In this document: positions 43,892 through 61,806 of the stretch, in pieces
How the letters are laid out: each line of letters starts with the position of its first letter
Position numbering within the stretch: position 1 is the stretch's first letter
IMG/VR virus record: IMGVR_UViG_3300024502_000010
Span: 1-64,000 of that record
Length of the DNA: 64,000 bases
Direction: 5' to 3' (one strand)
Made by a program: the position numbers and the translations under genes
Notes under the pieces: model-generated
What the model was told of the DNA's origin: nothing
What the model saw: the letters and a program-made list of their open reading frames with translations, nothing else
Database searches by the model: none

Positions 43892-44095
43892 TCAGGCAGA
43901 AGGCATAACACCAGCGAGCATCAGATTGAGGTTCGTTTCGTTATGCTCTGCTTCGATTTCTGTGATGTGCTCAATGTTATCAATCACCTGAACATTGTGC
44001 AGACGCTCATACCAGGCGTCGAACAGTTCCCAACTCTGAGCGGCACAAAGTTGGAAGGCATTCTCGATAGCGGTGTTCAGTTCGATTTGAGTCAC
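43892..44095 (-). CDS. Early hypothetical protein (67 aa)
   Basis: GTG start downstream of repeat copy 1. Confidence 0.55.
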   Translation of the reverse strand: MTQIELNTAIENAFQLCAAQSWELFDAWYERLHNVQVIDNIEHITEIEAEHNETNLNLMLAGVMPSA

Positions 44096-44149
44096 TTAGT
44101 GGTTTGTGGTTGTCCTTACACTATAGGTACACTTTAGAGGATCCAAGTT

Positions 44150-44296
44150 TCAGTTACCCAGACGGTCTTCGATATCACTTAAGACGCGCAATATCACCTC
44201 ACGACTATCCTCACCGTTCTCCTCTAACTGTTGCATAACCTCTTGCAGTTGAGGTAGAATATCAGTGGTTATTTGGGCGACTCGTATAATCCTCAT
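44150..44296 (-). CDS. Small hypothetical protein (48 aa, not in track)
   Basis: MRIIRVAQITTDILPQLQEVMQQLEENGEDSREVILRVLSDIEDRLGN; its stop lies 1 nt from repeat copy 1. Confidence 0.5.
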   Translation of the reverse strand: MRIIRVAQITTDILPQLQEVMQQLEENGEDSREVILRVLSDIEDRLGN

Positions 44297-44410
44297 GTCG
44301 CCCAAATGTTTATATTTTAGTGTTCTCATTTTGTTAACATAAAGACCCGATTATTTATGCTTTATGTTAACAAAATAAAAACGCCTTATATGGTATAAAT
44401 TGATACCAAA

Positions 44411-44584
44411 TTACCATCGGTCAGGTGTACTTAGGTCCTCAACATAAGCATCACACTTCTCTGCAGGTTCCAACTTGAATAACTTCTCCCAATCAATCTG
44501 GTGTGGGTCGAAGTCACCGAACACTGATAGATCCAGAGTAATCCTATAACGCTGCTTCTGTGCCTGCTGATATGCAACTGACAT
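44411..44584 (-). CDS. Hypothetical protein (57 aa; start likely 44584, not 44773)
   Basis: MSVAYQQAQKQRYRITLDLSVFGDFDPHQIDWEKLF; GGAG SD and a promoter lie immediately upstream. Confidence 0.65.
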   Translation of the reverse strand: MSVAYQQAQKQRYRITLDLSVFGDFDPHQIDWEKLFKLEPAEKCDAYVEDLSTPDRW

Positions 44585-44611
44585 AAGTTCGCTCCTGTGT
44601 GTTATGAAACT

Positions 44612-44640
44612 ACTATAAGATGCTGGGCGGTTTTTGTCAA
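44612..44640 (-). promoter_or_regulatory. Sigma70-like promoter
   Basis: Minus strand TTGACA-17-TATAGT. Confidence 0.7.
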
Positions 44641-44713
44641 TGGTCTGGGGGTATTTATCAGGGGTCGGTGGATTTATGCGGGGGGATTGTGGGGATTTGA
44701 GAACGCGGGGGTA

Positions 44714-44743
44714 TTGACATTTTGGGGGCGAGTGTGATAGAAT
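44714..44743 (+). promoter_or_regulatory. Divergent sigma70-like promoter
   Basis: TTGACA-18-TAGAAT with extended -10 TG, pointing at the TTTTCCACA cluster. Confidence 0.6.
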
Positions 44744-44788
44744 GACCTGTAAGATAACGACCCCCAGAGACATTTAAATGACTATAAG

Positions 44789-44852
44789 TTTTCCACAATT
44801 CTAACAGTTTTTCCACACATTTATTATACTTTTTCCACAACATTGTGGAAAA
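44789..44852. promoter_or_regulatory. Cluster of four DnaA-box-like 9-mers (TTTTCCACA)
   Basis: Direct copies at 44789, 44809 and 44831; inverted copy TGTGGAAAA at 44844; AT-rich context. Confidence 0.6.
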
Positions 44853-44912
44853 CTAATATCATTATTTCAGCACTTAAATATAAATAACGCAAGTACATTT
44901 TTCATCAATTCA

Positions 44913-45926
44913 GTGGCATACATCTACTCAATCACCAACCTTGAGAATAGCAAACTCTATGTGGGAAAGACTACACAACCCAACCCATATGATAGATGGA
45001 AGCAACACCTACAGAACGCAAGAAGTAAGGATAATTTAGCAGAGAACAATTCATCTCACTCTATGCCTATTGTTCGTGCCATATGTAAGTACGGAGCAGA
45101 TAACTTTAAGTTTAGAGTATTGGAAGAATGTAGCGATGATAATGTTAATGAACGTGAAACCTTTTGGATAAACAAACTTGATACTTGTGGTAAGAATGGA
45201 TATAACATTACATTAGGTGGTGATGGTGTAAAGAAACCAAAAAAGTATTGGGCAAATCATCCACATTCCAAAGCAGTGAGTTGTTATACATTAGAAGGTG
45301 AATGGGTTAGAGACTATGAGAGTGTAGGAATTGCTGCTGATAGTTGTGGAAATAAAAAGGGAAAAACTGGGATAATTGCTTGCATTAAAGGTGTGACATT
45401 TCAAGCACTTGGATATAGATGGGCTTGGAAAGGTGAAACACCTAAAGTAATAGAAAAGAGAGTAAATGTTCGTGGTGCTGTATATGGAATCAATCCAACA
45501 TTAGGGCGTAAAAAGATGTGGAAATCAATGGCAGATGCGGCAGAAGAAATACAAGGAAATCGTACAAATAATCACGCTATTCATCACTCACTTAACAGTC
45601 CCGACAATAGCAAATTACAGGTAAAAGGTTGGTATTTCTTTAGATCAAAACCAACAGATTGGACACCAGCAACAAAAACAAATTCAATAGAACACTATAA
45701 AAAAATTGCTGCAATTAGCAACGAAAAAAGAAAGAAACCTGTCTATGGTGTAAGTATTAAAACCAACGAAATCGTAGAATTTGGTAGTATGAGTGAGGCG
45801 TCATTCTTTATCAAAGGTGATGGTAATTATAGTGGCGTTGCTAATATCAAAAACAACATTCAACGTATAAACAATGGGCAAACTTGGTGCAATGCTTATG
45901 GTTATAGATGGTACGAAAAAGCATAA
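44913..45926 (+). mobile_element. Free-standing GIY-YIG homing endonuclease with NUMOD1-like DNA-binding repeats (337 aa)
   Basis: AYIYSITN...KLYVGKT...RWKQH, E.E.FWI and NGYN motifs; repeated V.G/C....G....F.S..EA modules; TATAAATA late promoter at 44879-44886; antisense to its neighbours. Confidence 0.9.
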
Positions 45927-45949
45927 AAAAAGACCCCTGATGTGGGGTC
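45925..45949 (-). terminator. Intrinsic terminator ending the minus-strand early transcript
   Basis: GACCCC-acatca-GGGGTC stem followed by T7 on the minus strand. Confidence 0.75.
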
Positions 45950-45960
45950 ACTGTGTATCA

Positions 45961-46254
45961 TCAATCAAGTGCTAATCTGTACCTTGCATAATCCTCTGCA
46001 TCACTACGTTTGCGGAATCGTGCTTCTTCTCCTTCAAATCGTAAAGGTAAGTATCGGTATTTCTTTCCTTCCTTGGTGATAACGATTCGGGAGAATAGGT
46101 GAAGTGAGTAACTACCTTCTTCAGTATATTCATCCTCTTTCTTTACTATGAAAGGGAGAACTTGTTGATTGTTGAATGACTGTTTGGAGAGTAACATTGG
46201 AAGATTAGTTGTTAATGAGTTCAGCAGGACTTCCGCATGATTTGTAGAACTCAA
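45961..46254 (-). CDS. Early hypothetical protein
   Basis: ORF track; the true start is probably the internal Met of MLLSKQSF. Confidence 0.6.
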   Translation of the reverse strand: MSSTNHAEVLLNSLTTNLPMLLSKQSFNNQQVLPFIVKKEDEYTEEGSYSLHLFSRIVITKEGKKYRYLPLRFEGEEARFRKRSDAEDYARYRLALD

Positions 46255-46510
46255 TCATACGATTTGCTTCATCTAGTGTAGAGAATGTTTGCGTTCTCCA
46301 CTGTTGTTGATACGGTGTAAAGTAGCGAATCGTGAACATTTTGTTTGATTCAGTTAGAGTGAGCATCTTTTGGTAATAGTTGTCTGCTTCTACTTCACAC
46401 TTATGAGATTCAGTTGCATCTTCAATCTCGTATTGTTTCATACTCAGAGAGTGAATCACGTTGTCCAGAAGATTAGTCAGTGCCTCAATCTTTTGTTCGT
46501 TAGTCATCAT
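46205..46510 (-). CDS. Early hypothetical protein, possibly two fused small genes
   Basis: MTNEQKIEALTNLL... then an internal MFTIRYFTPY... preceded by a leader-like CAAACAAA. Confidence 0.55.
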   Translation of the reverse strand: MMTNEQKIEALTNLLDNVIHSLSMKQYEIEDATESHKCEVEADNYYQKMLTLTESNKMFTIRYFTPYQQQWRTQTFSTLDEANRMIEFYKSCGSPAELINN

Positions 46511-46667
46511 TAGTGCGGTTCCTTTTACTCTGTTGGTGGTTTCTCCAAGTCAGGAAATCGTGGAGTGCTTTTTGATATTCTTCTTCCGAGAAGTATGTAC
46601 GGAGACCAATCGTATATGGGAAGGTACGGATTGTGGGTAATGCCTCAATCTTTTGTTCGTTAGTCAT
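46500..46667 (-). CDS. 55-aa hypothetical protein sharing its first nine codons with the next gene (not in track)
   Basis: MTNEQKIEALPTIRTFPYTIGLRTYFSEEEYQKALHDFLTWRNHQQSKRNRTNDD. Confidence 0.5.
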   Translation of the reverse strand: MTNEQKIEALPTIRTFPYTIGLRTYFSEEEYQKALHDFLTWRNHQQSKRNRTNDD

Positions 46668-46984
46668 CAGTTAAGCACCATACCTTCAGTGAAAGGAACT
46701 TTGTTGCCGTTATCAATCACAAACCATTCAAAGTCACGTTGAAAGATACGAGCATCATTTCCATGAACTTTCAGAATAGCATTGAGACGTGATTTGGTGG
46801 TTACAGTTCTATAACCACAGGTGTAAAGTTCAAGGAAGGTATCACCAATCGTTGCAATATGATTGCCGTGAAGATACACATAAGAGGCATCTCTTTCGGG
46901 CGAATAGAGAACTTCAGTGTTGTCATTTTTCCAGTCTTTGCAATCAATGATTGCTTTATTCATTTGGAGTTCAATCTTTCGCAT
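46667..46984 (-). CDS. Conserved early hypothetical protein (105 aa)
   Basis: MRKIE.QMN.AI, VYLHGNHIA and T.TTKSRLNAIL motifs; downstream of repeat copy 2. Confidence 0.75.
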   Translation of the reverse strand: MRKIELQMNKAIIDCKDWKNDNTEVLYSPERDASYVYLHGNHIATIGDTFLELYTCGYRTVTTKSRLNAILKVHGNDARIFQRDFEWFVIDNGNKVPFTEGMVLN

Positions 46985-47037
46985 GGTTGGAAGTTGTGGT
47001 TATACTATAGGTACACTTTAGAGGATCCAAGTTGCAA

Positions 47038-47241
47038 TCAAGCAACGATTGCAGACTCTACATTCACCTCACGGGTTTCCAGTAGAGCATAATCGTAGTT
47101 TGCTTCCAGATGCTTCAGGTAAGCATCTGCAGCGGAGAAGCAATCAAACAAGCGGAGAGATTTGAAGTCTTCACCTTCATAATCCAAACCGCCAATCACA
47201 GCGTAGACTTTAGACATTTGGGACATTTGGGAAGTGCTCAT
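47038..47241 (-). CDS. Early hypothetical protein; single gene between repeat copies 2 and 3
   Basis: KVYAVIGG.DYEGEDF.SLRLFDC. Confidence 0.65.
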   Translation of the reverse strand: MSTSQMSQMSKVYAVIGGLDYEGEDFKSLRLFDCFSAADAYLKHLEANYDYALLETREVNVESAIVA

Positions 47242-47534
47242 ACTATAGGTACACTTTAGAGGATCCAAGTTAGTATCACACTTCAATCAAAGGTCCAGAT
47301 ACATCACAAAACTCACACAAATAATAATCAATACTCACATTGATTTCCTCTGCAAGTTGTGAGAATTGTGCAAATTGTTCTTCGGAAAGAATGTAGAAAT
47401 CAGTCTCAATCATGGGGTGCAATAATGTCAGCAACAGTGTGTAATGTGGTGGCAGTGATGTTACGAACTCCTGGTGATAGGATACTCGCAACGATAAAGA
47501 TTAACAGAATTGTTTTCACTTTCTGTCGTCTCAT

Positions 47535-47765
47535 TCAGTCAAAGCGGGAAGATACATCACGACCAGGATTCTCAAGATGTGCTACACTCTCAGCAACACC
47601 TTCAGCAGTTAATGCAAACTGAACTTTTTTGCCTTCGTGATAGATGTCAAAGACAGATTGCACATAAGGAGTCAAATTGCCTTCAGAATCCCATGCGTTT
47701 CGTGTGTGTGAAGTCTTGACGATTTCGTAGACTTTAGAGGTGAGAGGTGAAGTGTAAGTGCTCAT
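47535..47765 (-). CDS. Early hypothetical protein
   Basis: MSTYTSPLTSKVYEIV...; the only ATG is the one directly after the repeat. Confidence 0.6.
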   Translation of the reverse strand: MSTYTSPLTSKVYEIVKTSHTRNAWDSEGNLTPYVQSVFDIYHEGKKVQFALTAEGVAESVAHLENPGRDVSSRFD

Positions 47766-47810
47766 ACTATAGGTACACTTTAGAGGATCCAAGTTAGTGA
47801 CTCTTACGAA

Positions 47811-47993
47811 TCACAAACCGTTGATATAATCAGCAACTGCTTGCTTATATTCTTCTTCAGTCTCAAAGATGCGACCGTGAATGTTACGCGGATAAGTAGG
47901 GTTCAATTCACCTACTGCAGCAACAGCGTAACAATCTTGGGCATCATATCCCATTTCAATGAGATTTTGAACGTAAGGATTGTAGTGTGTCAT
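47811..47993 (-). CDS. Early hypothetical protein (60 aa)
   Basis: MTHYNPYVQNLIEMGYD...YPRNIHGRIF. Confidence 0.65.
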   Translation of the reverse strand: MTHYNPYVQNLIEMGYDAQDCYAVAAVGELNPTYPRNIHGRIFETEEEYKQAVADYINGL

Positions 47994-48241
47994 TGTGATT
48001 TAGTGGTAAAACAGTGAGTGTGAATCAGTTGCCGAAGAAAGCGTCGAACTCATCAGCAACATAATCAATCAGTTCGTCAGTTGCATCAAGGTCAAAGACA
48101 TTGCAAACGAAATCTACACAATCATTCAAATCTGTGTGATTGTTGCACATGAACTCCAGAAGTGCAGGAGTGATGTCGGTTTGGAAGTCGAAAGAGGTGT
48201 TAGTCATACTATAGGTACACTTTAGAGGATCCAAGTTGCTA

Positions 48242-48832
48242 TCAGAAAAGATTGCGACCGAATGAACCACACAAATAAAATGCCATTCCTTTATCCTTAA
48301 GCGTCACACCTGCGAAACGGAGAGGAACATAGCGACCGTTAGTTTTAGATGCTTTGGTGCGAATCTGCAGCAATCCGTTAGGTCCAGTGATTGTATTCAG
48401 TTCGCTTTCAATATCAAATGCACGGCGAATCTGCTCACAAATGAACTCATAATCCTCACGCAGTTCCTGATAGTGTTCGGGATGAGTTTCCTCATTCAGT
48501 ACAACAGAACCTACATAATCGTTCTCACGGGTGAATCCAACATATACAGTTTGCTTCAGTTTCTGTCCAACCTTACTATCATCAAAAGACACAGAATCTT
48601 CAATGATTTCAGATAGACAATGCTTCAACTGTGTGGCAGCAATAGATTCACCAACTGTAAAAGTCTTAATCTCTCCATCCTCCAAATCTTTGAGGTCAGA
48701 AGAGTTAGGAACTCCAAGGACAATTTCTAACAGTTGCCCGCGAGCACCTTTGTTCTTGCCAGGTTTATCAAATGCACTGAAATCAGTTACATTCAGTTTG
48801 GCAGATACCTGCAAAGTGGTAAGTTTGGACAT
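48242..48832 (-). CDS. MutH/Sau3AI-like PD-(D/E)xK endonuclease (196 aa)
   Basis: NKGARGQLLEIVLGVPNSSDLKDLEDGEIKT resembles the MutH KG..G.LLE..LG.......D.....ELKT core; C-terminal LLQIRTKAS and AFYL motifs; flanked by repeat copies 5 and 6. Confidence 0.7.
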   Translation of the reverse strand: MSKLTTLQVSAKLNVTDFSAFDKPGKNKGARGQLLEIVLGVPNSSDLKDLEDGEIKTFTVGESIAATQLKHCLSEIIEDSVSFDDSKVGQKLKQTVYVGFTRENDYVGSVVLNEETHPEHYQELREDYEFICEQIRRAFDIESELNTITGPNGLLQIRTKASKTNGRYVPLRFAGVTLKDKGMAFYLCGSFGRNLF

Positions 48833-48883
48833 TGTGGAATTGCGGTGATACTATAGGTACACTTTAGAGGATCCAAGTTGCTA

Positions 48884-49138
48884 TCAACTTTCTTGTGTTA
48901 CACTTTCCACCAAATCGTTCACATAATCCTCATCATAGAGTCGTGAAATCTCTTCGATTAACTCTTCTGGAAGTGAGCAAGTTTCGCGGAGATTCTCTTC
49001 AATCGTATCGCTTGCAAATTGTACCAAACTGTCGAGGTCCATACCATCAACAATCGACTCAATGTAGAGTGCAAGCAGTTTATCGTATTGGTCTTGAGTA
49101 AGTGTCATTTTGTTTGTGAAGTTAGGGAGGGAAATCAT
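48884..49138 (-). CDS. Early acidic hypothetical protein
   Basis: Y.ESIVDGMDLDSLVQFA; packed in an operon. Confidence 0.6.
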   Translation of the reverse strand: MISLPNFTNKMTLTQDQYDKLLALYIESIVDGMDLDSLVQFASDTIEENLRETCSLPEELIEEISRLYDEDYVNDLVESVTQES

Positions 49139-49377
49139 TTCAAGATGTGGCGATAATCAATGGATTTGATACACCAACCGTAGGCAGTTGTAATCTCTTC
49201 TACTAAATCTTCTTCATCATCTGCCTCCCAGATTTGACCGATTGTTGCTTGAGTGGCATAATCAAACTCCAAGAATCCATCACATTCTGCATCGTGTTCT
49301 GGAGATTGATTCTCGCCACAATACGGACATTCATCATCAAAATCAAAAGCGATTTCAGTAACTTGGAATTGCATCAT
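49135..49377 (-). CDS. Early hypothetical protein with a CxxC..H..C motif
   Basis: QFQVTEIAFDF, CPYCG and DLVEEIT..YGWCIKSIDYR motifs. Confidence 0.65.
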   Translation of the reverse strand: MMQFQVTEIAFDFDDECPYCGENQSPEHDAECDGFLEFDYATQATIGQIWEADDEEDLVEEITTAYGWCIKSIDYRHILK

Positions 49378-49514
49378 TTGCAGTAGTTAGGGTCAATTTG
49401 GCAGAACTGATCTGCTTGGCGTTCTTGATACTCATTCACCGTCGCATAAGCAGGAATTGCAACTTTAAAACCAAGTGCAATAGTAGCAATCAGGAAAGCA
49501 ATTCGCATTACTAA

Positions 49515-49685
49515 TCAGTCAACGACAGAGTAACAGGCAACCCAGGAAGGAATCCCAGAAAGTGATAGCGAACCGTTGCGGGCATCGCAATAGTCTTGGG
49601 CGTCATCTTCAGTGTAGAAAGGTCCAATATACTCGGGAGAATCCAGAGCATCGGATACGAAACGGACGGTGAAAGTGTTGCTCAT
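49515..49685 (-). CDS. Early hypothetical protein
   Basis: MSNTFTVRF...SPEYIGPF; starts at the ATG adjacent to repeat copy 7. Confidence 0.6.
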   Translation of the reverse strand: MSNTFTVRFVSDALDSPEYIGPFYTEDDAQDYCDARNGSLSLSGIPSWVACYSVVD

Positions 49686-49719
49686 ACTATAGGTACACTT
49701 TAGAGGATCCAAGTTAGAA

Positions 49720-49863
49720 TCAACGAAAACTTACATTGACCGCAACAACTTTTGCGTGAGGATTTCGTGCCAGTGCAGTCTCACGGGCATCTTTTGGGTT
49801 GGTTGCTTGCACTTCTTCTTTGAAGACTTTGCCACCAACGTAGAGTTCAACGATGTACTTCAT
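49720..49863 (-). CDS. Small conserved protein (47 aa, not in track)
   Basis: MKYIVELYVGGKVFKEEVQATNPKDARETALARNPHAKVVAVNVSFR. Confidence 0.7.
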   Translation of the reverse strand: MKYIVELYVGGKVFKEEVQATNPKDARETALARNPHAKVVAVNVSFR

Positions 49864-49901
49864 GTGTTTGTTTGTATTTTAGAAAAAATTGAGGATTTCC
49901 C

Positions 49902-49990
49902 TGCAGTGAATGACCTATGACACCGCTGCAGTAGAATTGAAGAAAAAACAGGTTTTTGCTTCAGTGGTGGACTGGGTTCTCAGTGAGACA
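49902..49990. repeat. Duplicated intergenic hairpin element, copy A
   Basis: tgcagtg(a/g)atgacctatgacaccgctgcagtagaattgaagaaaaa is shared with 56087-56176. Confidence 0.85.
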
Positions 49991-50355
49991 CAAGTGAGAA
50001 TCACAGGGTTTGCCACTCTTGTGCCTCTTTCAAGTTAGAGTTAAAGAATTTTTGGAAGATAGAATCGATCACAGGATACCATTCTTCGTTTGCACTAGGA
50101 TACCCACATTCTCGTGCTTGATTGAGAAACTTAAGAATACAACTTTCCTCATTAGGAGTAAAATTAACGCGATTGAAAGTGTAACCGTCAGTCATCAATC
50201 ATCTCCAAAGTTGTTGACAAGAAAATCCTCAAGTTCGCAAAGTTCCACCTCATCTAAGGAGTCAATGTAGTTACGCAAAGTATCTTCTAAGACACCATTA
50301 TTCTTTTTGCAAGTTTCATACAGAAACTCAAAAAGTTGTGTTTTGTTAGTCATAA

Positions 50356-50625
50356 TCAGTTAGCGTAGATGGACATTTGCTTACGGTCACGGATTGAATC
50401 ATCAATCACCTCACCAATCTGTTCGTAAATGTAGTCGGAACCGCCTACATCAGCGAGCACATCTTGAGTGAAAAGAGAAGAAAAATACTTCTCTTGATTG
50501 TCCTCACCATCAAACTCAACGACATCGTGTTGAGTGAATACAAACGCAGCACAGGGAGCGTTCTCACCTTGACTCTCAATCATTTGGTTGATAGAGTCAC
50601 GAAGTTCAGAAAGAGTGCGGTACAT
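50356..50625 (-). CDS. Early hypothetical protein (89 aa)
   Basis: MYRTLSELRDSINQMIESQGENAPCAAFVFT..DV. Confidence 0.65.
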   Translation of the reverse strand: MYRTLSELRDSINQMIESQGENAPCAAFVFTQHDVVEFDGEDNQEKYFSSLFTQDVLADVGGSDYIYEQIGEVIDDSIRDRKQMSIYAN

Positions 50626-51078
50626 AATTAAACAGGGGTAACTTCAACAGAGCGGATAAGATTTGTGCGGTCTTGTGCTAGGTAATCATCAGCGATTTTA
50701 CCACAAGATGAACGAGACTTGATGAACCTTTCTTCATAGTAAGTCTCTGCACTGTTGGGGACTTTATACTCAATCAAGAGTCGATAGTTGTTCATAATCA
50801 GTACAGAAGAGAGAAAGAACCACAGAACTTACGAACCCACTGGAGAGTATCATAATGACTGCGAGGATTAGACATTACCATGCTCTTGTTAGTTACAGGA
50901 TTGAGAGCAATAGCAACATATTTGTGGTCACATTCTTGATACTCAGGGGTGATTTGTTGAATGAACATTTGCATCACCTTACCTTCTTTCCAGTTGGTGA
51001 CATAGTGAAAGACTTGATCCATTTCAGTGGTTGTGCTCATACTATAGGTACACTTTAGAGGATCCAAGTAAGAATCAC

Positions 51079-51333
51079 TCACCACTTTCCTTGTTGAATG
51101 AGAATCTTTTTGATTTCAGTATAAATGAAGTGACGAAGTTTAGAGTCGGTAGTGTTATCAAAAGCATAATAGAGACGATTCAAGTATTCATTCTGTGTCG
51201 CACCTATGTTACCATTACCACCGATGTCATTGAGTGTAGAACCTCCCTTAGATTTGGGTTTTCCGAAGTTGCCTGTAATGTTTCCTTGTGTGCGAAGTTT
51301 GGGGCGAATCTTTGAAAGGTTAGAGTAAGTCAT
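51079..51333 (-). CDS. Early hypothetical protein (84 aa)
   Basis: SKIRPKLRTQG.ITGNFG..K.K.GS.LND motif. Confidence 0.65.
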   Translation of the reverse strand: MTYSNLSKIRPKLRTQGNITGNFGKPKSKGGSTLNDIGGNGNIGATQNEYLNRLYYAFDNTTDSKLRHFIYTEIKKILIQQGKW

Positions 51334-51587
51334 CGTGCTACAATGTCAAGAGTTTCCAACAGCATCATAGAAAGTTCCATCTGGTTCTCATCATCAACCA
51401 CAGGAATGTTTGTCTCTACAAACTCACTAATCAGTTGGGCAAAGAGTTCAGTTGTGCGCTCATCTGCGAATAGAGCAGTGGCAAGTTCGTTCTTGAACCC
51501 ATCACGCAAAAGTTTGAGAGACTTTGTGACAGTCATTTCTTTGATTTGTTCATCATAAGTCATTTCAGTGTCAGGGATTGTGCTCAT
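51330..51587 (-). CDS. Early hypothetical protein (85 aa)
   Basis: Four-base overlaps with the genes on both sides. Confidence 0.65.
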   Translation of the reverse strand: MSTIPDTEMTYDEQIKEMTVTKSLKLLRDGFKNELATALFADERTTELFAQLISEFVETNIPVVDDENQMELSMMLLETLDIVAR

Positions 51588-51808
51588 TCTTCATTTCCAT
51601 CAAAAATCGAATCTTCCCAACCATCAAGGTAAGGTTGTTCATCCTCCTCATAAGGGAACATTTCGTCATACTCTTCGTCAGTCAGAGTAAGATACTGAAC
51701 ATTAGCATTTTTGTGCTCTTCAGCATACACTAACTGATAGTGAGCGAAAGAAGAAGGGTCTGAACTAGCGTATTCTAGCAAACCATCAACAAAACAAAGG
51801 TAGTTCAT
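51584..51808 (-). CDS. Early hypothetical protein (74 aa)
   Basis: MNYLCFVDGLLEYAS...FAHYQLVYAEEH. Confidence 0.65.
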   Translation of the reverse strand: MNYLCFVDGLLEYASSDPSSFAHYQLVYAEEHKNANVQYLTLTDEEYDEMFPYEEDEQPYLDGWEDSIFDGNEE

Positions 51809-51843
51809 TTTGCGTACAGATAGGTTATAAATAATAACACAGT

Positions 51844-52332
51844 ATGCAGGTATTAAAGATGAAAGAACACCCAGAACATAAAGGTTATTTTATCACAGAA
51901 AACGGTGAAGTTTGGTCATACTGGCGCAATCGTGGAAGAGATGGGTGGGGAGTAGTATTGGATAAAGAACCAAAAAAAAGAAGATTTAATAATCATTGCA
52001 AGGGATACTTGACTGTTTGGATTAAAACGGAAGAAGGACAGAAGTTAAAAAAAGTTCATCGTTTGGTCGCAGAAACTTACATTCCAAATCCAAATAATCT
52101 CCCTCAAGTTAATCACATTGATGGCGTAAAAACAAACAACAATGTCAGTAATCTTGAGTGGTGCAGTAATCAAAAAAACACGGAGTTGGCATTAGCAAAA
52201 GTTCATCGGTTAGTAACACCAACTGGAGAAATAGTAGAAGTTTTTAATCTTGGAAAGTTTTGTAGAGAACATAAAATTGATAGGGGAGACCTTTATAAAG
52301 GGAAAAAGTCCAAAGGTTACTATTTGCAATAA
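51844..52332 (+). mobile_element. Free-standing HNH homing endonuclease (NUMOD4-like N-terminus plus HNH)
   Basis: Y.ITENGEVWS, GYLTV, VHRLVAETYIPNPNNLPQVNHIDGVKTNNNVSNLEWCS motifs; TATAAATA late promoter at 51826-51833; antisense to neighbours. Confidence 0.92.
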
Positions 52333-52764
52333 TCACCTTTTGTAAAGATATCCGGACGACCAATCTGCGTTCTCAAACAACCATTCACGGTCCTTAATTA
52401 ACAAGAGATTGTATCGCTCACCCTTTGCAGGACTACGCCACGACGCTGACTTGAAAACGCCTCCATTTTGCTTGTCGATAAAACAGTGAACCGATCTCGA
52501 TCCACCACCATTCACCAGAATGACTTTGTGATACTTTTTGCCAGTCTCAACAGTATAATCAATGTCACACTTGCCAGACTTGAGTTCATCAATCTTGCGC
52601 TGATGATACTCTTGATTATCAGCATCATTCACGAACTTTTGGTGACCGCGAATAGAATACTGACGATAGTTGTCTTTCAGTGCTTCAATCAGCAGCAGAG
52701 TGTTCTTATACACATTCTCTGCAATAGTTTGTTGTGCTTGTGCTTGCATCGTAGGAGTGCTCAT
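52333..52764 (-). CDS. Conserved early hypothetical protein
   Basis: GKKYHKV...SVHCFIDK..G.V.KSASW..PAKG.RYNL motif; start after repeat copy 9. Confidence 0.7.
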   Translation of the reverse strand: MSTPTMQAQAQQTIAENVYKNTLLLIEALKDNYRQYSIRGHQKFVNDADNQEYHQRKIDELKSGKCDIDYTVETGKKYHKVILVNGGGSRSVHCFIDKQNGGVFKSASWRSPAKGERYNLLLIKDREWLFENADWSSGYLYKR

Positions 52765-52792
52765 ACTATAGGTACACTTTCGAGGATCCAAG

Positions 52793-53710
52793 TTACCAAC
52801 TCTTTGCGATTGTGAAGTTGGCATGAGAGAATACCTCACGATCAACTACTTTGTAAGACCCAAACTTGTTATGAATGACATAACCCTCGTGGAAACCTGC
52901 AACATCCCAGAGGAAACATTCAATGTCATCCTCTTCATGAATGAACAGGAACAAATCATCCTTGATAGACTTCACCAACTTCCACAATCTGATGAGGTTG
53001 ATGTCACAATCGCATTTTTCTGCAATTTCATCCTCACGGATGGTGCGTTGCTCTCGGATGCAAGCGTTAATCTCTTTTTTGATTTGTGATGCTTTCTTGT
53101 CGCTCACAAACTCACACAGAGTGCTCATTTGTTTAGCAAAGTTACACACATCCTCCAAATCTTCACGATAAGGATTCAGCGACACAGCAGGTTGCACAAA
53201 CAAACATTTCTTTGTGCTTGCAAACTTGCTAGTGATAGGATGTGCTACCATTTCAGGCAGACGCTCACCAGTGTAGTAAGTATGTGGAGCAACGATAATC
53301 TCTTGACGCACAACTTCAGGAAAACGATAGGTAATCGTGTTGGGCGTGAATGTATCCAACCCTTTACCGAAACCAATCCAATCTCCCTGATACACATTGT
53401 TAGTGCGAGGAAGATAATCCAGACAGAAGATGAGGATTTGTGCTACCCTTGGTTGTCCACCAAAATGAGTAAAGATGTCATCTTCGTTATAGCAAAGGCG
53501 AATCTTTTGCTTGTTAAATGCTGCTTTGGTGCAGACAAAAAACTTACCATTCTCAGGATTAGTGCCCCAAACAATAGCAGGAGCACCATCCATCTTGACG
53601 CTGATAAAACTATCAACCTCAGAGAACCAATCAAGAACAGATAGATTACCCGTCAGGATTTCATCTTCAGGGTGCTCAAGGTGCTTATTTTGCATTGGTT
53701 GCTTACTCAT
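52793..53710 (-). CDS. Conserved protein with a KxDG ligase-type motif (possible nucleotidyltransferase)
   Basis: NKHLEHPED, SVKMDGAPAIVWG..P..GKFFV.TK and HEGYV...K.VDR..FS..NF motifs; exactly fills the interval between repeat copies 9 and 10. Confidence 0.6.
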   Translation of the reverse strand: MSKQPMQNKHLEHPEDEILTGNLSVLDWFSEVDSFISVKMDGAPAIVWGTNPENGKFFVCTKAAFNKQKIRLCYNEDDIFTHFGGQPRVAQILIFCLDYLPRTNNVYQGDWIGFGKGLDTFTPNTITYRFPEVVRQEIIVAPHTYYTGERLPEMVAHPITSKFASTKKCLFVQPAVSLNPYREDLEDVCNFAKQMSTLCEFVSDKKASQIKKEINACIREQRTIREDEIAEKCDCDINLIRLWKLVKSIKDDLFLFIHEEDDIECFLWDVAGFHEGYVIHNKFGSYKVVDREVFSHANFTIAKSW

Positions 53711-53980
53711 ACTATAGGTACACTTTCGAGGATCCAAGTTTCAATCAATCAAACTTGCATCAGTTTAGCAAGACGATTGCGAATATCAAAGAGTTCCATT
53801 TCATCCATATCTACATCATCAAGACCTACGGGAGCAAACGCTTCAAGATCTACAGTGCCATTTTGCATAATGGGAGAATAATATAACTCATCTCCATCTT
53901 CTTGCGACAGAGTATAGACGCAACCGTGACCAGGAACAGTGAGGAAAATCATTGAAGTTTTACGAACAAAGGTACAATAA

Positions 53981-54010
53981 AGGAGCACTTGCTAAATTGC
54001 AAGTGCTCCT
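53981..54010. terminator. Perfect 12-bp hairpin downstream of 54021..54308 (terminator or processing site)
   Basis: AGGAGCACTTGC-taaatt-GCAAGTGCTCCT; the U-tract is weak. Confidence 0.5.
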
Positions 54011-54020
54011 GTGTCAGTTT

Positions 54021-54263
54021 TTATACTGCCACACGACGGGCAGATATTTGTTGTTCAATAAAGTTCAATACTTGCTTCACATAAGGCGAAACAGTTTGAG
54101 TGAACTTCACCACATCTTCACGAAGTTTGTTGACTTCATACTGATGGATTTGCCAGCGAACCTGAATGTCTTGGAAGTATTGTTCACGAGTAATCAGTAC
54201 CTGTGGGACGGACACTTCGGGAGCAACAGAGACATTAGCAGTTTGCTTGCGAGCGCGAGGCAT
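54021..54263 (-). CDS. Early hypothetical protein
   Basis: MPRARKQTANV...LITREQYFQDIQVRWQIHQYE. Confidence 0.65.
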   Translation of the reverse strand: MPRARKQTANVSVAPEVSVPQVLITREQYFQDIQVRWQIHQYEVNKLREDVVKFTQTVSPYVKQVLNFIEQQISARRVAV

Positions 54264-54310
54264 AGGGTAAATGCGTCTTACACTATAGGTACACTTTAGA
54301 GGATCCAAGT

Positions 54311-54490
54311 TTAATTCACTGGAAGTTTTGCCATTGACTTACCTTTTTTGTGGTCTGTGATATACTTTCGCGCAGAACTTTCGGTCCTACAAACTTTCTC
54401 AAGTTGCTGACCATTGTGAATGATAAGATACTGATTCCCAAACGGAATTGCAGCATATGTATCCTTGAACATTGTAAATCCTTCTTTCAT
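54311..54490 (-). CDS. Small hypothetical protein (59 aa, not in track)
   Basis: MKEGFTMFKDTYAAIPFGNQYLIIHNGQQLEKVCRTESSARKYITDHKKGKSMAKLPVN. Confidence 0.65.
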   Translation of the reverse strand: MKEGFTMFKDTYAAIPFGNQYLIIHNGQQLEKVCRTESSARKYITDHKKGKSMAKLPVN

Positions 54491-54492
54491 CG

Positions 54493-55356
54493 TTACATAA
54501 ACTTGGTAAGACCAACAGTTTCACTAACTCTCTTTTCAATCAATTTACCATACTCCTCGTGAAGTTCGCATCCAACATAATTCCTTCCCAAAGATTTGGC
54601 AACAGCAGCAGTAGTCCCACTACCCATAAATGGGTCAAGAATAGTGTCACCTTCACGAGAACCAGCAATAATACAAGGTTCAATAAGTTCTGGAGGATAA
54701 ACTGCAAAGTGAGAACCTTTGTATGGTTTAGTTGTTACTTCCCATACACTACGTTTCCGTTTTAATTCCTTGCCATCTACAGTGGGTTCTTTAATCGAAT
54801 CAACATCAAAATAATAGTTCTTGCTCTTAGATAAGAGGAAGATATATTCGTGAGATTTGGTACATCGATCTTTCATACTTTCGGGCATTGGATTTGGTTT
54901 GCTCCAAATAATATCCTGTCGTAGATACCAACCATCTGCACGCAAAGCAAATGCTAGCATCCAAGGAATACCAATCAAATCTTTATCCTTTAGACCCTCA
55001 AGTTTATTTCCTCTTCTAGGATTTCGTATTTGTGGCAAATCTTGGTTGTTAGATGCCACAGATTGCTTAGGTAGTGTCTGACCTTTACCAGAACGATAGT
55101 TGTAATAAGAATCACCAATGTTAACCCACAATGTGCCATCATCTGTAAGAACATCACGCACACCGCGAAACACCTCTACCAGTTGGGAGATAAACTCTTC
55201 AGGCGACTCTTCTAAACCAATTTGATTATCTTCGTTACCGTAATCACGCAGACCGTAGTATGGTGGAGAGGTCACACACATTTGTGCTTTTACACCAGCG
55301 TCTACAAAATGTTTAAGAGTTGAGCGGCAGTCACCATAAAGAATAACATCCTTCAT
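54493..55356 (-). CDS. DNA methyltransferase, N4-C/N6-A beta class (287 aa)
   Basis: VTSPPY catalytic motif near the N-terminus; HFAVYPPEL and ILDPFMGSGTT SAM-binding motif near the C-terminus. Confidence 0.92.
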   Translation of the reverse strand: MKDVILYGDCRSTLKHFVDAGVKAQMCVTSPPYYGLRDYGNEDNQIGLEESPEEFISQLVEVFRGVRDVLTDDGTLWVNIGDSYYNYRSGKGQTLPKQSVASNNQDLPQIRNPRRGNKLEGLKDKDLIGIPWMLAFALRADGWYLRQDIIWSKPNPMPESMKDRCTKSHEYIFLLSKSKNYYFDVDSIKEPTVDGKELKRKRSVWEVTTKPYKGSHFAVYPPELIEPCIIAGSREGDTILDPFMGSGTTAAVAKSLGRNYVGCELHEEYGKLIEKRVSETVGLTKFM

Positions 55357-56048
55357 TCAAGAACCTCTTTTACAAACAATTTATCCATATTTGAGTGATT
55401 TATACGAAAGCAAGTGCCACGATTGCGAACACCCTTACCAGTGCCAACATTATACTGGGTTCTCAGTCGTAAGTCAATAGAAATTACATCATCTTCGATT
55501 GCCTTACGAAACAGATTTTTATCAATAGAAATGTAGACATACGCTTCATTGTAGTGAAAATACTCTATACCATTACGAACTTCAACATCGGCAAATACTT
55601 TAACACAAGATGGAAATTTGTGAGCAAACTGTTTAATAAGTGAATCCCAATCCCACCTAACAATCTCCAGTTCTTCGTGCTTTATGGAAACATATTCATC
55701 ATCAGTATGAATCCAAAATCCTCTGTTGTTTTTGGTTCTTGTCACAGTAGATTGTCCAGACAATTCCCCAATGTGTTTTGTGTGAGGAAATCCAAAAGTT
55801 TCTAGGAACTTTAATTGAGGTATCTGCCATTCACCTTCCTTTGTAAAGAGAGTTTGTTTTCCACCAGCACCTTTCCTTGCTGCTTTCAACTCTTTTCCAT
55901 CAATATCTGGACCAGAGATACAATTCTCAGTCAAACCAAGTTCTTGTTCAAAAGTATGACCAACTCCAGTATCACCTTTGCGATGAGACTTTATGAAACC
56001 TTTTGCTTTAATTCGGTTGTAAGCAGGAACGAACTCAACGAAATCCAT
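55353..56048 (-). CDS. MvaI/BcnI-family restriction endonuclease-like protein (231 aa)
   Basis: RKGDTGVGHTFEQELGLTEN..SGPDI.G.ELKA, TLFTKE and RNRGTCFRI motifs; ATGA overlap with the methyltransferase. Confidence 0.8.
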   Translation of the reverse strand: MDFVEFVPAYNRIKAKGFIKSHRKGDTGVGHTFEQELGLTENCISGPDIDGKELKAARKGAGGKQTLFTKEGEWQIPQLKFLETFGFPHTKHIGELSGQSTVTRTKNNRGFWIHTDDEYVSIKHEELEIVRWDWDSLIKQFAHKFPSCVKVFADVEVRNGIEYFHYNEAYVYISIDKNLFRKAIEDDVISIDLRLRTQYNVGTGKGVRNRGTCFRINHSNMDKLFVKEVLE

Positions 56049-56086
56049 GGTAAAATCTATACTTTAGTAAAAATCAGGAATTTGGT

Positions 56087-56176
56087 TGCAGTGGATGACC
56101 TATGACACCGCTGCAGTAGAATTGAAGAAAAATCAGGTTTTGACCCCTGACTGTGACTGGGTTCTTAGGCGAGACT
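56087..56176. repeat. Duplicated intergenic hairpin element, copy B
   Basis: See copy A at 49902. Confidence 0.85.
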
Positions 56177-57363: not shown

Positions 57364-57453
57364 TACGAATTACAGAGTTTCAGGTGGTTTGGTATCTAAA
57401 AGACATTATAGCACCCTTCCTGACGCTTGGAAAGGGTGCTGGCGGACAGTTAA

Positions 57454-57609
57454 TCAACCGCCAAACATTTCATCAAACAACCAATCACCAGAACGCTCTT
57501 TTTCTTCCCAGACTTTGTTAGCGTTTGCTTCAATCATTGCTCGCTCAATTTTCATGTCGATAGGAGAAACAGTGCTGAACCAGTTACCGTTGCGGTCTTG
57601 CCAGAGCAT
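57454..57609 (-). CDS. Small hypothetical protein (51 aa, not in track)
   Basis: MLWQDRNGNWFSTVSPIDMKIERAMIEANANKVWEEKERSGDWLFDEMFGG; downstream of repeat copy 12. Confidence 0.65.
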   Translation of the reverse strand: MLWQDRNGNWFSTVSPIDMKIERAMIEANANKVWEEKERSGDWLFDEMFGG

Positions 57610-57668
57610 AATGTTGTTTCGTTTGAGTGCTTATACTATAGGGACACTTTAGAGGATCCAAGTAAGTA

Positions 57669-58277: not shown

Positions 58278-58304
58278 TGTTATCTAAACACTACTTTTTA
58301 GTAT

Positions 58305-58505
58305 TTAGAACTCTACTTCCTTTGCTTTATATGAACCCTTGAATACTCGTCCTTCAGTATAGAATTGCTTTACACGTTCGCGGCGAGTAGCAAGAAGCAA
58401 ATCATATTCTTCTTGTTGCTGCTTAGTAAAGATAAAATCTTGACGACGCCAAGCATCTTTCAGTTCTTGAATGTGAGGGAGCACGTTGGGGATGTGTTCA
58501 GTCAT
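58305..58505 (-). CDS. Hypothetical protein (66 aa)
   Basis: VLPHIQELKDAWRRQDF.FTKQQQEEYDLLL..RRERV. Confidence 0.65.
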   Translation of the reverse strand: MTEHIPNVLPHIQELKDAWRRQDFIFTKQQQEEYDLLLATRRERVKQFYTEGRVFKGSYKAKEVEF

Positions 58506-58752
58506 TTGAGAATAATAAAGGAAAAGTGTTCTGTGTGGGTGATTTGGTGGACAGTTTAGAAACTGTCAGTAATCATAGTTGGAGTTAAGATACTCATTAA
58601 GATTGAAGTCGTTAGATTCTTCAATGAGTTCAGTTAGATCTTTTTCAATAAAATCAAATCCATTAGATTCTTCAATTTGAATGTCATCGAAGCAGTCCAT
58701 AATTTGTTTCATGCTTACATTATAGGTACACTTTAGAGGATCCAAGTAAAAA

Positions 58753-59001: not shown

Positions 59002-59002
59002 T

Positions 59003-61789: not shown

Positions 61790-61806
61790 AATAATTTACC
61801 TAAGAA

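What the first reader, a model, noticed from the sequence alone, without database searches (positions are those of the whole stretch)
44612..44890. Candidate origin: divergent promoters plus four cyanobacterial-type DnaA boxes
Seen: back-to-back sigma70 promoters, a G-rich stretch, three direct TTTTCCACA at 20- and 22-bp spacing, one inverted copy and AT-rich flanks. Established: TTTTCCACA fits the DnaA consensus TTWTNCACA and is the typical cyanobacterial oriC box, while T4 origins use promoter-primed R-loops without DnaA. Inference: a hybrid origin recruiting host DnaA, or a decoy or DnaA-regulated promoter.
Basis: partly seen in the sequence, partly recalled or inferred. Interest (0 to 1): 0.7.

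Follow-up and report, generated by a model that had tools for sequence, protein, structure and literature searches.

The report
DnaA-box array in cyanophage control element
A T4-like cyanophage carries a tight, evolutionarily conserved array of perfect host DnaA-binding boxes just after its only backward-facing strong promoter, which marks a candidate host-assisted replication origin or control switch that can now be tested in cultured relatives.

Summary
Four perfect TTTTCCACA boxes lie at 44789-44852. They are 4 of only 6 copies in the 204.8-kb genome. They sit between divergent sigma70-type promoters and a GIY-YIG homing-endonuclease gene.

The boxes are not chance:
- The same slot holds 1-3 direct boxes, sometimes with an inverted copy, in 23 of 65 close relatives and in isolates S-SM2 and S-SCSM1.
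- More distant cyanomyoviruses, including Syn9, S-RIM8, S-PM2 and P-TIM68, carry 2-8 boxes in comparable noncoding regions.
- Same-strand spacing is 11-12 or 20-22 bp, and the flanks read (A)G-box-G(G), as in cyanobacterial chromosomal arrays.
- Exact copies outnumber one-mismatch copies 4:1.
- Boxes also occur upstream of the promoter, so they act as DNA sites rather than as an RNA motif.

The phage encodes no DnaA. The promoters beside the box clusters are the only strong ones that point against the genome's uniform gene direction.

An origin function is not shown. GC skew is uninformative. The conserved AT-rich T-tract block that follows the boxes in relatives has been replaced here by the endonuclease gene. 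Other cassettes fill the slot in most relatives. A complete genome of the same phage (284 kb) has a second, intact element.

Best reading (0.4): an accessory host-DnaA cassette of a transcription-primed, T4-type origin. The main rival is DnaA-gated transcription.

The parts
44411..44587 (-). Small conserved gene (58 aa, phrog_12516) that is the first gene of the leftward unit. I used it as the anchor to find relatives.
   Evidence: ORF and ribosome-binding site read; PHROG match 6.8e-22; 446 relatives in IMG/VR; homologues in S-SM2, Bellamy, SynMITS9220M01, P-TIM68, S-SCSM1 and S-SRM01.
44612..44640 (-). Leftward sigma70-type promoter: -35 TTGACA at 44640-44635, 17-nt spacer, -10 TATAGT at 44617-44612.
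   Evidence: 11/12 match; conserved in S-SM2, Bellamy and SynMITS9220M01.
44641..44713 (.). G-rich spacer between the divergent promoters, with repeated GGGG-n-ATT(T) units. Relatives read GGGGGGATTGTGGGGATTTTGTGAC. No binder is assigned.
   Evidence: family D1; conserved across 64 related loci.
44714..44743 (+). Rightward promoter (P_right): -35 TTGACA at 44714-44719 and an extended -10, TG-a-TAGAAT, at 44735-44743. The predicted start site is near 44750. It is the only TTGACA plus extended -10 promoter in the genome that points against the gene direction.
   Evidence: 11/12, TG present. A P_right match was found in 64 of 65 loci, in two sequence variants. It is 1 of 8 such promoters in G000 and the only one on the + strand. 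In two metatranscriptome runs the contigs break over the promoter region, and one resumes at 44771 (weak, no strand information).
44750..44788 (+). Conserved leader (TAAGATAAC; relatives have TAAGATCACAAG) plus one copy of a roughly 31-33-nt module (..CCCAGAGACATTTAAATGACTATAAG). Relatives carry this module in 1-6 tandem copies.
   Evidence: alignment A1.
44789..44797 (+). DnaA-type box 1, TTTTCCACA.
44809..44817 (+). DnaA-type box 2, TTTTCCACA, 20 bp after box 1.
44831..44839 (+). DnaA-type box 3, TTTTCCACA, 22 bp after box 2.
44844..44852 (-). DnaA-type box 4, inverted. It is convergent with box 3 across a 4-nt gap (10-nt perfect palindrome 44831-44852). With its flanks it also pairs with box 1 (17-nt inverted repeat, 44783-44799 with 44842-44858).
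   Evidence: I2, I14; folds. The same convergent pair with a 4-5-nt gap occurs in L035, L037, P-TIM68 and S-PM2.
44879..44886 (+). TATAAATA, the T4 late-promoter consensus, 27 nt before the endonuclease start codon. It belongs to the inserted cassette.
   Evidence: Sequence. The same upstream stretch is present only in endonuclease-bearing relatives (L021 in alignment A1). The late-promoter consensus itself is from my own knowledge of T4.
44913..45926 (+). Free-standing GIY-YIG homing-endonuclease gene (337 aa, GTG start). It is inserted where relatives carry a conserved phased T-tract AT-rich block.
   Evidence: Pfam PF01541 2.1e-14; PHROG homing endonuclease 6.7e-25. Absent from S-SM2, Bellamy and SynMITS9220M01. 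In 14 of 65 loci a GIY-YIG gene fills this slot and my scan found no T-tract block.
45932..45949 (-). Intrinsic terminator of the right-hand minus-strand operon. It forms the conserved right border of the element.
   Evidence: equivalent hairpins in relatives.

Best explanation
The four TTTTCCACA boxes are double-stranded binding sites for the host initiator DnaA. They form one of several interchangeable cassettes inside a conserved noncoding control element of cyanomyoviruses.

The element has this layout: leftward early promoter, G-rich spacer, a strong rightward promoter facing against all genes, a conserved leader with tandem modules, the cassette, a phased T-tract AT-rich block, and a terminator.

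Most likely the element is a T4-type, transcription-primed replication origin (promoter plus unwinding element, as in T4 oriF, oriG and oriE). Host DnaA would be an accessory factor that does one of two things:
- It helps open or mark the DNA so the phage's own gp59-like loader and gp41-like helicase can enter.
- It binds the box hairpin on the strand displaced by the transcript, as at an ABC-primosome A site.

In this genome copy, a homing-endonuclease gene has replaced the AT-rich block. The promoter therefore now reads through the boxes into that gene. The complete genome of the same phage keeps a second, intact element.

Shown: the anatomy, the conservation, the DNA-level grammar and the absence of a phage DnaA. 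Inferred: DnaA binding, and all replication steps.
For: 1. Box identity. TTTTCCACA is the cyanobacterial DnaA box, bound by DnaA in vitro in Cyanothece and reported as the DnaA box of Synechococcus PCC 7942 and Anabaena oriC (PMC4674748).
2. Clustering. 4 of the 6 genomic copies lie within 64 bp.
3. Conservation.
   - 23 of 65 close relatives have 1-4 boxes in the same slot.
   - S-SM2 and S-SCSM1 have them too.
   - More than 116 IMG/VR contigs carry box pairs. 41 of the 80 I inspected are cyanomyovirus relatives matching window 38-47 kb, with up to 8 boxes.
   - Syn9, S-RIM8, S-PM2 and P-TIM68 have convergent pairs or triplets.
4. DNA-level grammar.
   - Same-strand spacing is 11-12 bp (18 cases) or 20-22 bp (67 cases).
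   - Flanks read A-G|box|G-G. Cyanobacterial chromosomal arrays show the same spacing and the same G at -1 and +1.
   - There are 213 exact copies against 55 one-mismatch copies, and the CACA core varies least.
5. Boxes also lie upstream of the promoter. This holds in L101, L136, L153 and in the second element of the complete genome G003, so they are not simply an RNA motif.
6. No phage DnaA. Neither the DnaA AAA+ domain nor its DNA-binding domain is found in the phage. A gp59-like loader and a gp41-like helicase are present.
7. Promoter orientation. The promoters beside the box clusters are the only strong TTGACA plus extended -10 promoters oriented against the genes: 1 of 8 in G000 and 2 of 12 in G003, the latter two beside its two clusters. 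No ORF follows them in endonuclease-free relatives.
8. Linked AT-rich block. A conserved AT-rich block of phased T tracts follows the cassette in relatives and in element B. It abuts the boxes in S-PM2 even though it is inverted there.
9. T4 precedent. A minimal origin is a promoter plus an AT-rich unwinding element, and oriE uses an early promoter plus direct repeats (PMC3016281). [quoted passage not shown]
Against: - There is no binding or replication data of any kind. The complex prediction was not folded.
- GC skew is monotonic and shows nothing at either element.
- In the window the candidate unwinding block is gone, so this copy lacks a defining origin part.
- Cassettes b and c, or none, replace the boxes in 42 of 65 close relatives. 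P-TIM68 and S-B05 lack the long intergenic region at this position. DnaA boxes therefore cannot be essential to the element.
- T4-type phages are not known to need DnaA (own knowledge).
- The transcript across the T-tract block would be U-rich, which does not favour a stable R-loop (inference).
- By my reading, DnaA-trio grammar in the correct orientation is absent (and the sequence).
- The cyanobacterial arrays used for comparison could not be confirmed as oriC. No neighbour I scanned at the 4 loci checked was dnaA or dnaN.
Confidence: 0.4

Rival explanations
1. DnaA-gated transcription without a replication role. DnaA bound to the boxes at +40 to +100, or upstream in the other element, acts as a roadblock or activator for the backward-facing promoter. 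This would tune a noncoding early transcript, and here the homing-endonuclease mRNA, to the host's DnaA status.
For: The boxes lie directly downstream of the predicted start site in the window and in most close relatives, and upstream of it in element B and the L136-type loci. The promoter is strongly conserved while the transcribed cassette is exchangeable. DnaA is an established transcription factor (abstracts of PMC11317965 and PMC4447404). In the window, the only thing downstream is the endonuclease gene.
Against: No function is known for the transcript. It has no Rfam match, and relatives have no ORF there. This reading does not explain the conserved T-tract block or why the promoter must face against all genes.
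Confidence: 0.25
2. DnaA sink or modulator, like datA or DARS. The amplified phage genome titrates or remodels host DnaA to shut down or redirect host initiation. The link to the promoter would be incidental.
For: The boxes are perfect consensus copies in tight arrays of 4 to 9 per genome. DnaA titration by high-affinity chromosomal boxes is described (abstract of PMC12371093). T5-like phages keep 8 DnaA boxes in a noncoding region judged unrelated to replication (bioRxiv 10.1101/866236).
Against: A sink needs no fixed position. Here the boxes keep a precise slot next to a specific promoter and AT block across distant lineages. Many relatives do without them.
Confidence: 0.1
3. RNA-level element. 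The rightward transcript is a modular early noncoding RNA, and the repeated UUUUCCACA units and terminal hairpin act as RNA, for example as a protein or sRNA sponge or as a stability hairpin.
For: A hairpin at the end of the cassette recurs in every lineage. In L030, L049 and L025 the last box sits in its loop, and the arm sequences differ between lineages. Fold z-scores are -1.8 to -3.6. The region is present in riverine metatranscriptome assemblies.
Against: Boxes also occur upstream of the promoter and in both orientations. The 11- and 21-bp helical spacing, and the flanks shared with chromosomal arrays, point to duplex DNA recognition. The hairpin arms are themselves degenerate box copies, so the apparent covariation is not independent evidence. 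There is no Rfam family.
Confidence: 0.08
4. The boxes bind some other protein, either a phage-encoded factor or another host factor, and the match to the DnaA box is coincidental. Cassettes b and c would bind that protein's variants.
For: Three mutually exclusive cassettes share one design, direct repeats about 21-23 bp apart followed by an inverted copy. This is what allelic specificity variants of one binder would look like. Many neighbouring small genes have no known function.
Against: The 9-mer is identical to the host DnaA box. Its one-mismatch variants include TTATCCACA and position-5 changes that the DnaA consensus allows. Its flanks and spacing match cyanobacterial arrays. Cassette types recombine freely with both promoter variants. 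I did not test whether any phage gene co-varies with cassette type.
Confidence: 0.12

Closest known systems
DnaA-box arrays of cyanobacterial oriC (TTTTCCACA; Synechococcus PCC 7942, Anabaena, Cyanothece)
   Same: Identical 9-mer, multiple copies in both orientations, 11- and 20-22-bp spacing, and G at -1 and +1.
   Different: This array is on a lytic T4-like phage, embedded after or before a strong promoter. It has no dnaA or dnaN neighbour, no skew switch, and no correctly placed DnaA-trios or unwinding element in this copy.
Phage T4 origins oriF/oriG (promoter plus AT-rich unwinding element, R-loop primed) and oriE (early promoter plus 12-nt direct repeats)
   Same: The element combines a promoter, direct repeats and an AT-rich block, and it lies in a region otherwise transcribed the other way. 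It uses an early-type sigma70 promoter, as at oriE.
   Different: T4 origins have no DnaA boxes and, for oriF and oriG, use MotA middle promoters. No R-loop or initiation data exist here. In the window the AT block is replaced by a gene.
T5-like phages: 8 DnaA boxes in the noncoding injection-stop region of the terminal repeat
   Same: A conserved, precisely arranged DnaA-box cluster sits among repeats and palindromes in the noncoding DNA of a lytic phage.
   Different: The T5 boxes are paired at 3-bp gaps inside large inverted repeats, lie in the first-step-transfer DNA and are thought unrelated to replication. T5 is a different phage family with a different box variant (TTATCCACA).
A site of pBR322/R6K (ABC primosome): an ssDNA hairpin with a DnaA box in its stem
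   Same: Boxes 3 and 4 form a perfect hairpin whose stem is a DnaA box, downstream of a promoter. If an R-loop displaced this strand, DnaA could bind the hairpin.
   Different: The A site loads host DnaB-DnaC, whereas this phage has its own helicase and loader. Nothing shows that the strand is ever single-stranded.
Lambda pR-DnaA transcriptional activation of ori-lambda, and P1 oriR DnaA boxes (own knowledge, not checked in papers here)
   Same: In both, host DnaA boxes near a phage promoter or origin act as accessory elements rather than as the primary initiator site.
   Different: Those are temperate phages with their own initiators (O/P and RepA) and iterons. No such initiator or iteron-binding gene is identified here.
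E. coli datA/DARS DnaA-modulating loci (own knowledge; titration paper PMC12371093 seen)
   Same: A small cluster of high-affinity boxes lies outside a chromosomal origin.
   Different: No IHF site or DnaA-ATP cycling function can be assessed here, and the tight positional link to a promoter is not a datA or DARS feature.

Membership tests
DnaA-box array (DnaA-binding DNA) | Several matches to TTWTNCACA or to the species-type box TTTTCCACA | tested here: met
   Four perfect copies at 44789-44852. Box definition from PMC4674748.
DnaA-box array (DnaA-binding DNA) | Clustering beyond chance | tested here: met
   4 of 6 genomic copies lie within 64 bp. Shuffles give 1.64 per 64 kb.
DnaA-box array (DnaA-binding DNA) | The motif is conserved while the flanks and spacers diverge, with helical phasing as in chromosomal arrays | tested here: met
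   213 exact against 55 one-mismatch copies in 60 non-redundant cyanophage segments. Spacing is 11-12 and 20-22 bp. Flanks are shared with 21 cyanobacterial loci. The segments were chosen for holding at least one exact box, which inflates the exact count somewhat.
DnaA-box array (DnaA-binding DNA) | DnaA binds the site | not testable with these tools
   The complex-prediction job with four copies of DnaA domain IV plus the 76-bp duplex was not folded.
Bacterial-type oriC / basal unwinding system | AT-rich unwinding element next to the boxes | tested here: not met
   In the window, the conserved T-tract block seen in relatives is replaced by the GIY-YIG gene (alignment A1). It is present in relatives and in element B of G003.
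Bacterial-type oriC / basal unwinding system | At least 3 DnaA-trios (NAN) within 0-16 nt of a box, on the correct side | tested here: inconclusive
   Rule taken from PMC8287927. TAA TAT CAT TAT at 44854-44865 lies 3' of TGTGGAAAA. By my reading of E. coli R1 (own knowledge) that is the wrong side.
Bacterial-type oriC / basal unwinding system | Strand-composition switch at the site | tested here: not met
   Cumulative GC skew of the complete 284-kb genome is monotonic. Within the window there is only a local blip caused by the + strand gene.
T4 oriF/oriG-type R-loop origin | Promoter directed into the origin | tested here: met
   TTGACA plus extended -10 at 44714-44743, conserved in relatives, and the only strong promoter facing against the genes.
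T4 oriF/oriG-type R-loop origin | AT-rich downstream unwinding element within about 100 bp | tested here: inconclusive
   The window keeps about 60 bp of AT-rich DNA (44853-44912) but has lost the conserved block. Relatives have the block 20-30 bp after the cassette.
T4 oriF/oriG-type R-loop origin | Persistent R-loop, and replication starting there | not testable with these tools
   Only unstranded metatranscriptome contigs could be laid on the region.
Iteron-type plasmid or P1 oriR origin | Iterons with an adjacent initiator (Rep) gene | tested here: not met
   Neighbouring ORFs have no Rep, DnaA or HTH-initiator family match. The direct repeats present are the boxes themselves and the 33-nt modules.
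Known structured noncoding RNA | Match to an Rfam model | tested here: not met
   Nothing relevant at E<=10 in the window region (only a chance-level 13-bit hit at 44077-44096, outside the element), and nothing at E<=1 in six related loci.

The most novel reading that the evidence does not exclude
Cyanomyoviruses may carry a transcription-primed origin whose firing is gated by a swappable cassette of host-factor sites. The DnaA-box cassette would couple the start of phage DNA replication to the host's DnaA status, which in cyanobacteria follows light, redox state and the cell cycle (own knowledge). Cassettes b and c would plug the same origin into other host signals, and homing endonucleases would compete for the same slot.
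Probability: 0.2. Interest if true: 0.85.

Novelty: new variant of a known kind. Interest (0 to 1): 0.6.

Why it matters
Where and how T4-like cyanophages start replication is unknown. Only a skew-based prediction of a single theta origin for Syn9 is cited in the literature I could read (PMC2984593).

This analysis finds a conserved, modular noncoding element. It combines perfect host-initiator boxes, the only backward-facing strong promoters in the genome and a conserved AT-rich block. That gives a concrete and testable origin or regulatory candidate, and it is present in cultured phages: Syn9, S-PM2, S-RIM8, S-SM2 and S-SCSM1.

If DnaA is used, it would be a direct molecular link between host physiology and phage replication in globally abundant phages, and the first DnaA-assisted origin in the T4 group. 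I found no paper in the searchable library that links cyanophages and DnaA boxes. Subscription literature could not be checked.

Tried and rejected
- Chance cluster: rejected.
- Known RNA family: no Rfam match in the window or in six relatives.
- GC-skew test of the origin idea: uninformative, because nearly all genes lie on one strand and the skew is monotonic over the complete 284-kb genome.
- Metatranscriptome support: 24 riverine RNA runs hold the region, but they are kept only as unstranded contigs with flat depth. The only hint is that contigs break over the promoter region in the two lower-depth runs.
- Structure prediction of DnaA domain IV on the box DNA: the job was not folded, so it gives no evidence.
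- A phage-encoded DnaA or DnaA-like DNA-binding domain: none found.
- Confirming that the cyanobacterial comparison arrays are oriC: at 4 loci, no flanking ORF I scanned was dnaA or dnaN, so I call them only chromosomal arrays.
- A third element in G003, suggested by a T-block-like hit at 31.7 kb: on inspection it is not an element.
- Weigele 2007 (the Syn9 origin prediction) and the Syn9 transcriptome paper: not held in the library.
- The boxes as part of the endonuclease cassette: rejected, because endonuclease-free relatives also have boxes.
- The element as an insulator between early and late transcription units: considered weak, because the leftward early promoter restarts transcription in the same direction immediately.

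Full report
**What the window is.** The window is the first 64 kb of a 204,829-bp IMG/VR virus record. The nearest isolates are T4-like cyanomyoviruses (Kyanoviridae): S-SM2, Bellamy and SynMITS9220M01, at only about 70-75% DNA identity over short pieces. A 284,050-bp record rated complete (G003) is 99.94% identical to the first 174.6 kb of this genome. I treat G003 as the complete genome of the same phage. Almost all genes lie on one strand, which is the minus strand of the window.

**The observation.**
- TTTTCCACA occurs at 44789, 44809 and 44831 on the + strand and at 44844 on the - strand, and nowhere else in the window.
- The genome has six copies in all, and the relaxed DnaA consensus gives no second cluster.
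- The two flanking promoters are the best sigma70 matches in the neighbourhood.
- Boxes 3 and 4 form a perfect 10-nt palindrome. Boxes 1 and 4 with their flanks form a 17-nt inverted repeat.

**What surrounds the boxes.**
- To the left is a 58-aa gene of unknown function (phrog_12516), driven by the leftward promoter.
- To the right, a 337-aa GIY-YIG homing-endonuclease gene (Pfam 2e-14) starts at 44913. A TATAAATA motif precedes it at 44879-44886.
- That gene ends 5 nt before the terminator of the next minus-strand operon.
- S-SM2, Bellamy and SynMITS9220M01 have no plus-strand gene here. They do keep the whole intergenic region, including the rightward promoter and its leader.
- In most phages of this group, therefore, the rightward promoter drives a noncoding transcript against the direction of every gene.

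**Comparative anatomy.** I used the small gene as an anchor and fetched 80 of 446 IMG/VR relatives. Sixty-four of them had enough upstream DNA to analyse. They share one layout, in this order:
1. A leftward promoter.
2. A G-rich spacer (GGGGGGATTGTGGGGATTTTGTGAC).
3. A rightward TTGACA plus extended -10 promoter, in two sequence variants.
4. A leader, TAAGATCACAAG.
5. One to six tandem modules of about 33 nt.
6. A cassette.
7. A conserved block of phased T tracts (…ACATTTTTTAATACATTTTTAAT…).
8. The terminator.

**The cassette slot.** The cassette is one of several mutually exclusive kinds among the 65 loci (64 relatives plus the window):

| Cassette | Content | Loci (of 65) |
|---|---|---|
| a | 1-3 direct DnaA boxes, sometimes with an inverted or degenerate inverted copy | 23 |
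| b | An AT-rich unit rich in GATA/TATC | 22 |
| c | ATTCTCAATAA twice direct plus one inverted | 9 |
| other or none | – | 11 |

- Both promoter variants combine with every cassette type, so the parts are shuffled by recombination.
- In 14 loci, including the window, a GIY-YIG gene occupies the place of the T-tract block.
- The slot holds several different endonuclease genes, so it is a homing hot spot.

**Wider distribution.**
Of the 80 I inspected, 41 have tblastx matches to the window genome, nearly all within window 38-47 kb.
- Some of these (L101, L136, L153) have 7-8 boxes in one intergenic region. Three to five direct boxes plus one inverted lie upstream of the same kind of promoter, and one or two direct plus one inverted lie downstream.
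- G003 has a second, paralogous element at 29.3 kb that is missing from the shorter record. It has four direct and one inverted box, then a TTGACA-17-TATACT promoter in the same anti-gene orientation, three 21-nt repeats and the T-tract block.
- Among isolates:
  - S-SM2 and S-SCSM1 have boxes at the orthologous site.
  - Syn9 and S-RIM8 have a convergent pair about 90 nt after a similar promoter and leader, in the small-gene region upstream of the baseplate wedge gene.
  - P-TIM68 has a convergent pair elsewhere in its genome.
  - S-PM2 has three boxes abutting the AT block, which is inverted there.
  - Bellamy, S-B05 and P-SSM2 have no cluster.

**DNA site or RNA motif?**
- In 60 non-redundant cyanophage segments, neighbouring same-strand boxes are 11-12 bp apart (18 cases) or 20-22 bp apart (67 cases). 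That is one or two helical turns.
- The flanks favour A-G before the box and G-G after it.
- Twenty-one cyanobacterial chromosomal loci found with the same pattern show the same spacing classes and the same G at -1 and +1. I could not confirm that these loci are oriC.
- Exact copies outnumber one-mismatch copies 213 to 55, even though 27 one-mismatch sequences exist for each exact one. The CACA core varies least.
- Boxes occur on both sides of the promoter and in both orientations.
- Together this points to recognition of duplex DNA by the protein that recognises the chromosomal arrays, which is DnaA (PMC4674748).
- The phage encodes neither DnaA domain. It does encode a gp59-like loader and a gp41-like helicase.
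- The RNA reading is not excluded. Each cassette ends in an inverted repeat, and the transcript folds somewhat better than shuffles. However, the arms of that repeat are themselves box-like.

**A striking association.** The only TTGACA plus extended -10 promoters that face against the genes are those beside the box clusters. That is 1 of 8 in the window's genome, and 2 of 12 in the complete genome, the latter two beside its two clusters.

**Mechanism.**
- A promoter followed by an AT-rich unwinding element is the minimal T4 origin (oriF, oriG). oriE uses an early promoter and direct repeats (PMC3016281).
- The constant parts of the cyanophage element fit that scheme. The cassettes look like accessory sites for host factors.
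- DnaA could help melt or mark the DNA for the phage helicase loader. Alternatively it could bind the box hairpin on a displaced strand, as at the ABC-primosome A site (PMC6127211).
- I rate this origin reading at 0.4.

Against the origin reading:
- There are no functional data.
- GC skew is uninformative.
- The boxes are dispensable among relatives.
- DnaA-trio grammar is not met.
- The unwinding block is lost in the window copy.

In this genome the practical consequence is that the promoter reads through four DnaA boxes into the endonuclease gene. The intact element B may carry whatever function the element has.

Rival readings:
- DnaA-gated transcription: 0.25.
- Another binding protein: 0.12.
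- A DnaA sink, comparable to the eight DnaA boxes of T5-like phages: 0.1.
- An RNA-level element: 0.08.

**Novelty.** DnaA boxes in phage or plasmid control regions are known: T5, and P1, lambda and pBR322 from my own knowledge. I found no paper in the searchable library that links cyanophages and DnaA boxes. T4-type origins are described without them. I therefore file this as a new variant of a known kind. It is well conserved and directly testable in cultured phage-host pairs.

Noticed in passing
window 44140-62259, minus strand (14 sites, e.g. 44140, 47024, 47262, 47786, 48228, 48870, 49706, 51061, 52785, 53731, 54302, 57655, 58739, 62259): There are fourteen copies of an almost invariant 30-nt element, AACTTGGATCCTCTAAAGTGTACCTATAGT. 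Each lies just upstream of a small minus-strand ORF. It has a -10-like TATAGT but no TTGACA, so it looks like a phage-specific early or middle promoter cassette with an unknown upstream recognition box.
   Followed up: partly
window 44879-45926, and loci L021, L027-L029, L038, L057, L063, L078, L081, L048, L082: The position after the cassette is a homing hot spot. Different GIY-YIG genes, or another ORF, occupy it in 14 or more of 65 relatives, and where a GIY-YIG gene is present my scan found no T-tract block. The window's copy carries its own TATAAATA late-promoter motif.
   Followed up: partly
loci L014, L040, L043, L058 and others (cassette b); L033, L067, L073, L079 and S-SRM01 L093:1040-1075 (cassette c): Two other cassettes replace the DnaA boxes in the same slot and are mutually exclusive with them. 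Cassette b contains Fur-box-like hexamers (ATCATTATC, GATAAT). Cassette c has the 11-mer ATTCTCAATAA twice direct plus once inverted. Their binding proteins are unknown, and the Fur resemblance is only a lead.
   Followed up: partly
G003:C1:29080-29440 (locus L330), absent from the window's 204.8-kb record: The complete 284-kb genome of the same phage has a second, paralogous element. It has 4 direct plus 1 inverted DnaA box upstream of an anti-gene-direction promoter, three 21-nt repeats and the intact T-tract block.
   Followed up: yes
L147:3940-4165 and L166 (IMG/VR contigs, uncultured cyanomyovirus relatives): Eight DnaA boxes are interleaved with many copies of an ATAACGAA(G/C)T repeat. 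This is an iteron-plus-DnaA-box arrangement reminiscent of plasmid origins.
   Followed up: no
S-PM2 NC_006820 19177-19333 (locus L354): The record annotates tRNA-Asn and tRNA-Leu over the three DnaA boxes and the AT block. By eye the sequence there does not look like a tRNA, so the coordinates may be offset.
   Followed up: no
window 44641-44713 and the same place in relatives: A conserved G-rich repeat (GGGGATT units about 11 nt apart) lies between the two divergent promoters. Part of it is complementary to the leader (44644-44659 with 44753-44768, 88%). It remains unexplained.
   Followed up: no
L137 (29% GC) and L115 (58% GC), IMG/VR contigs unrelated to the window: Non-cyanophage viral contigs also carry 5-6 tandem TTTTCCACA boxes, so DnaA-box arrays on viral contigs are not confined to cyanophages. 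Some of these contigs may be prophage or host-origin fragments.
   Followed up: no
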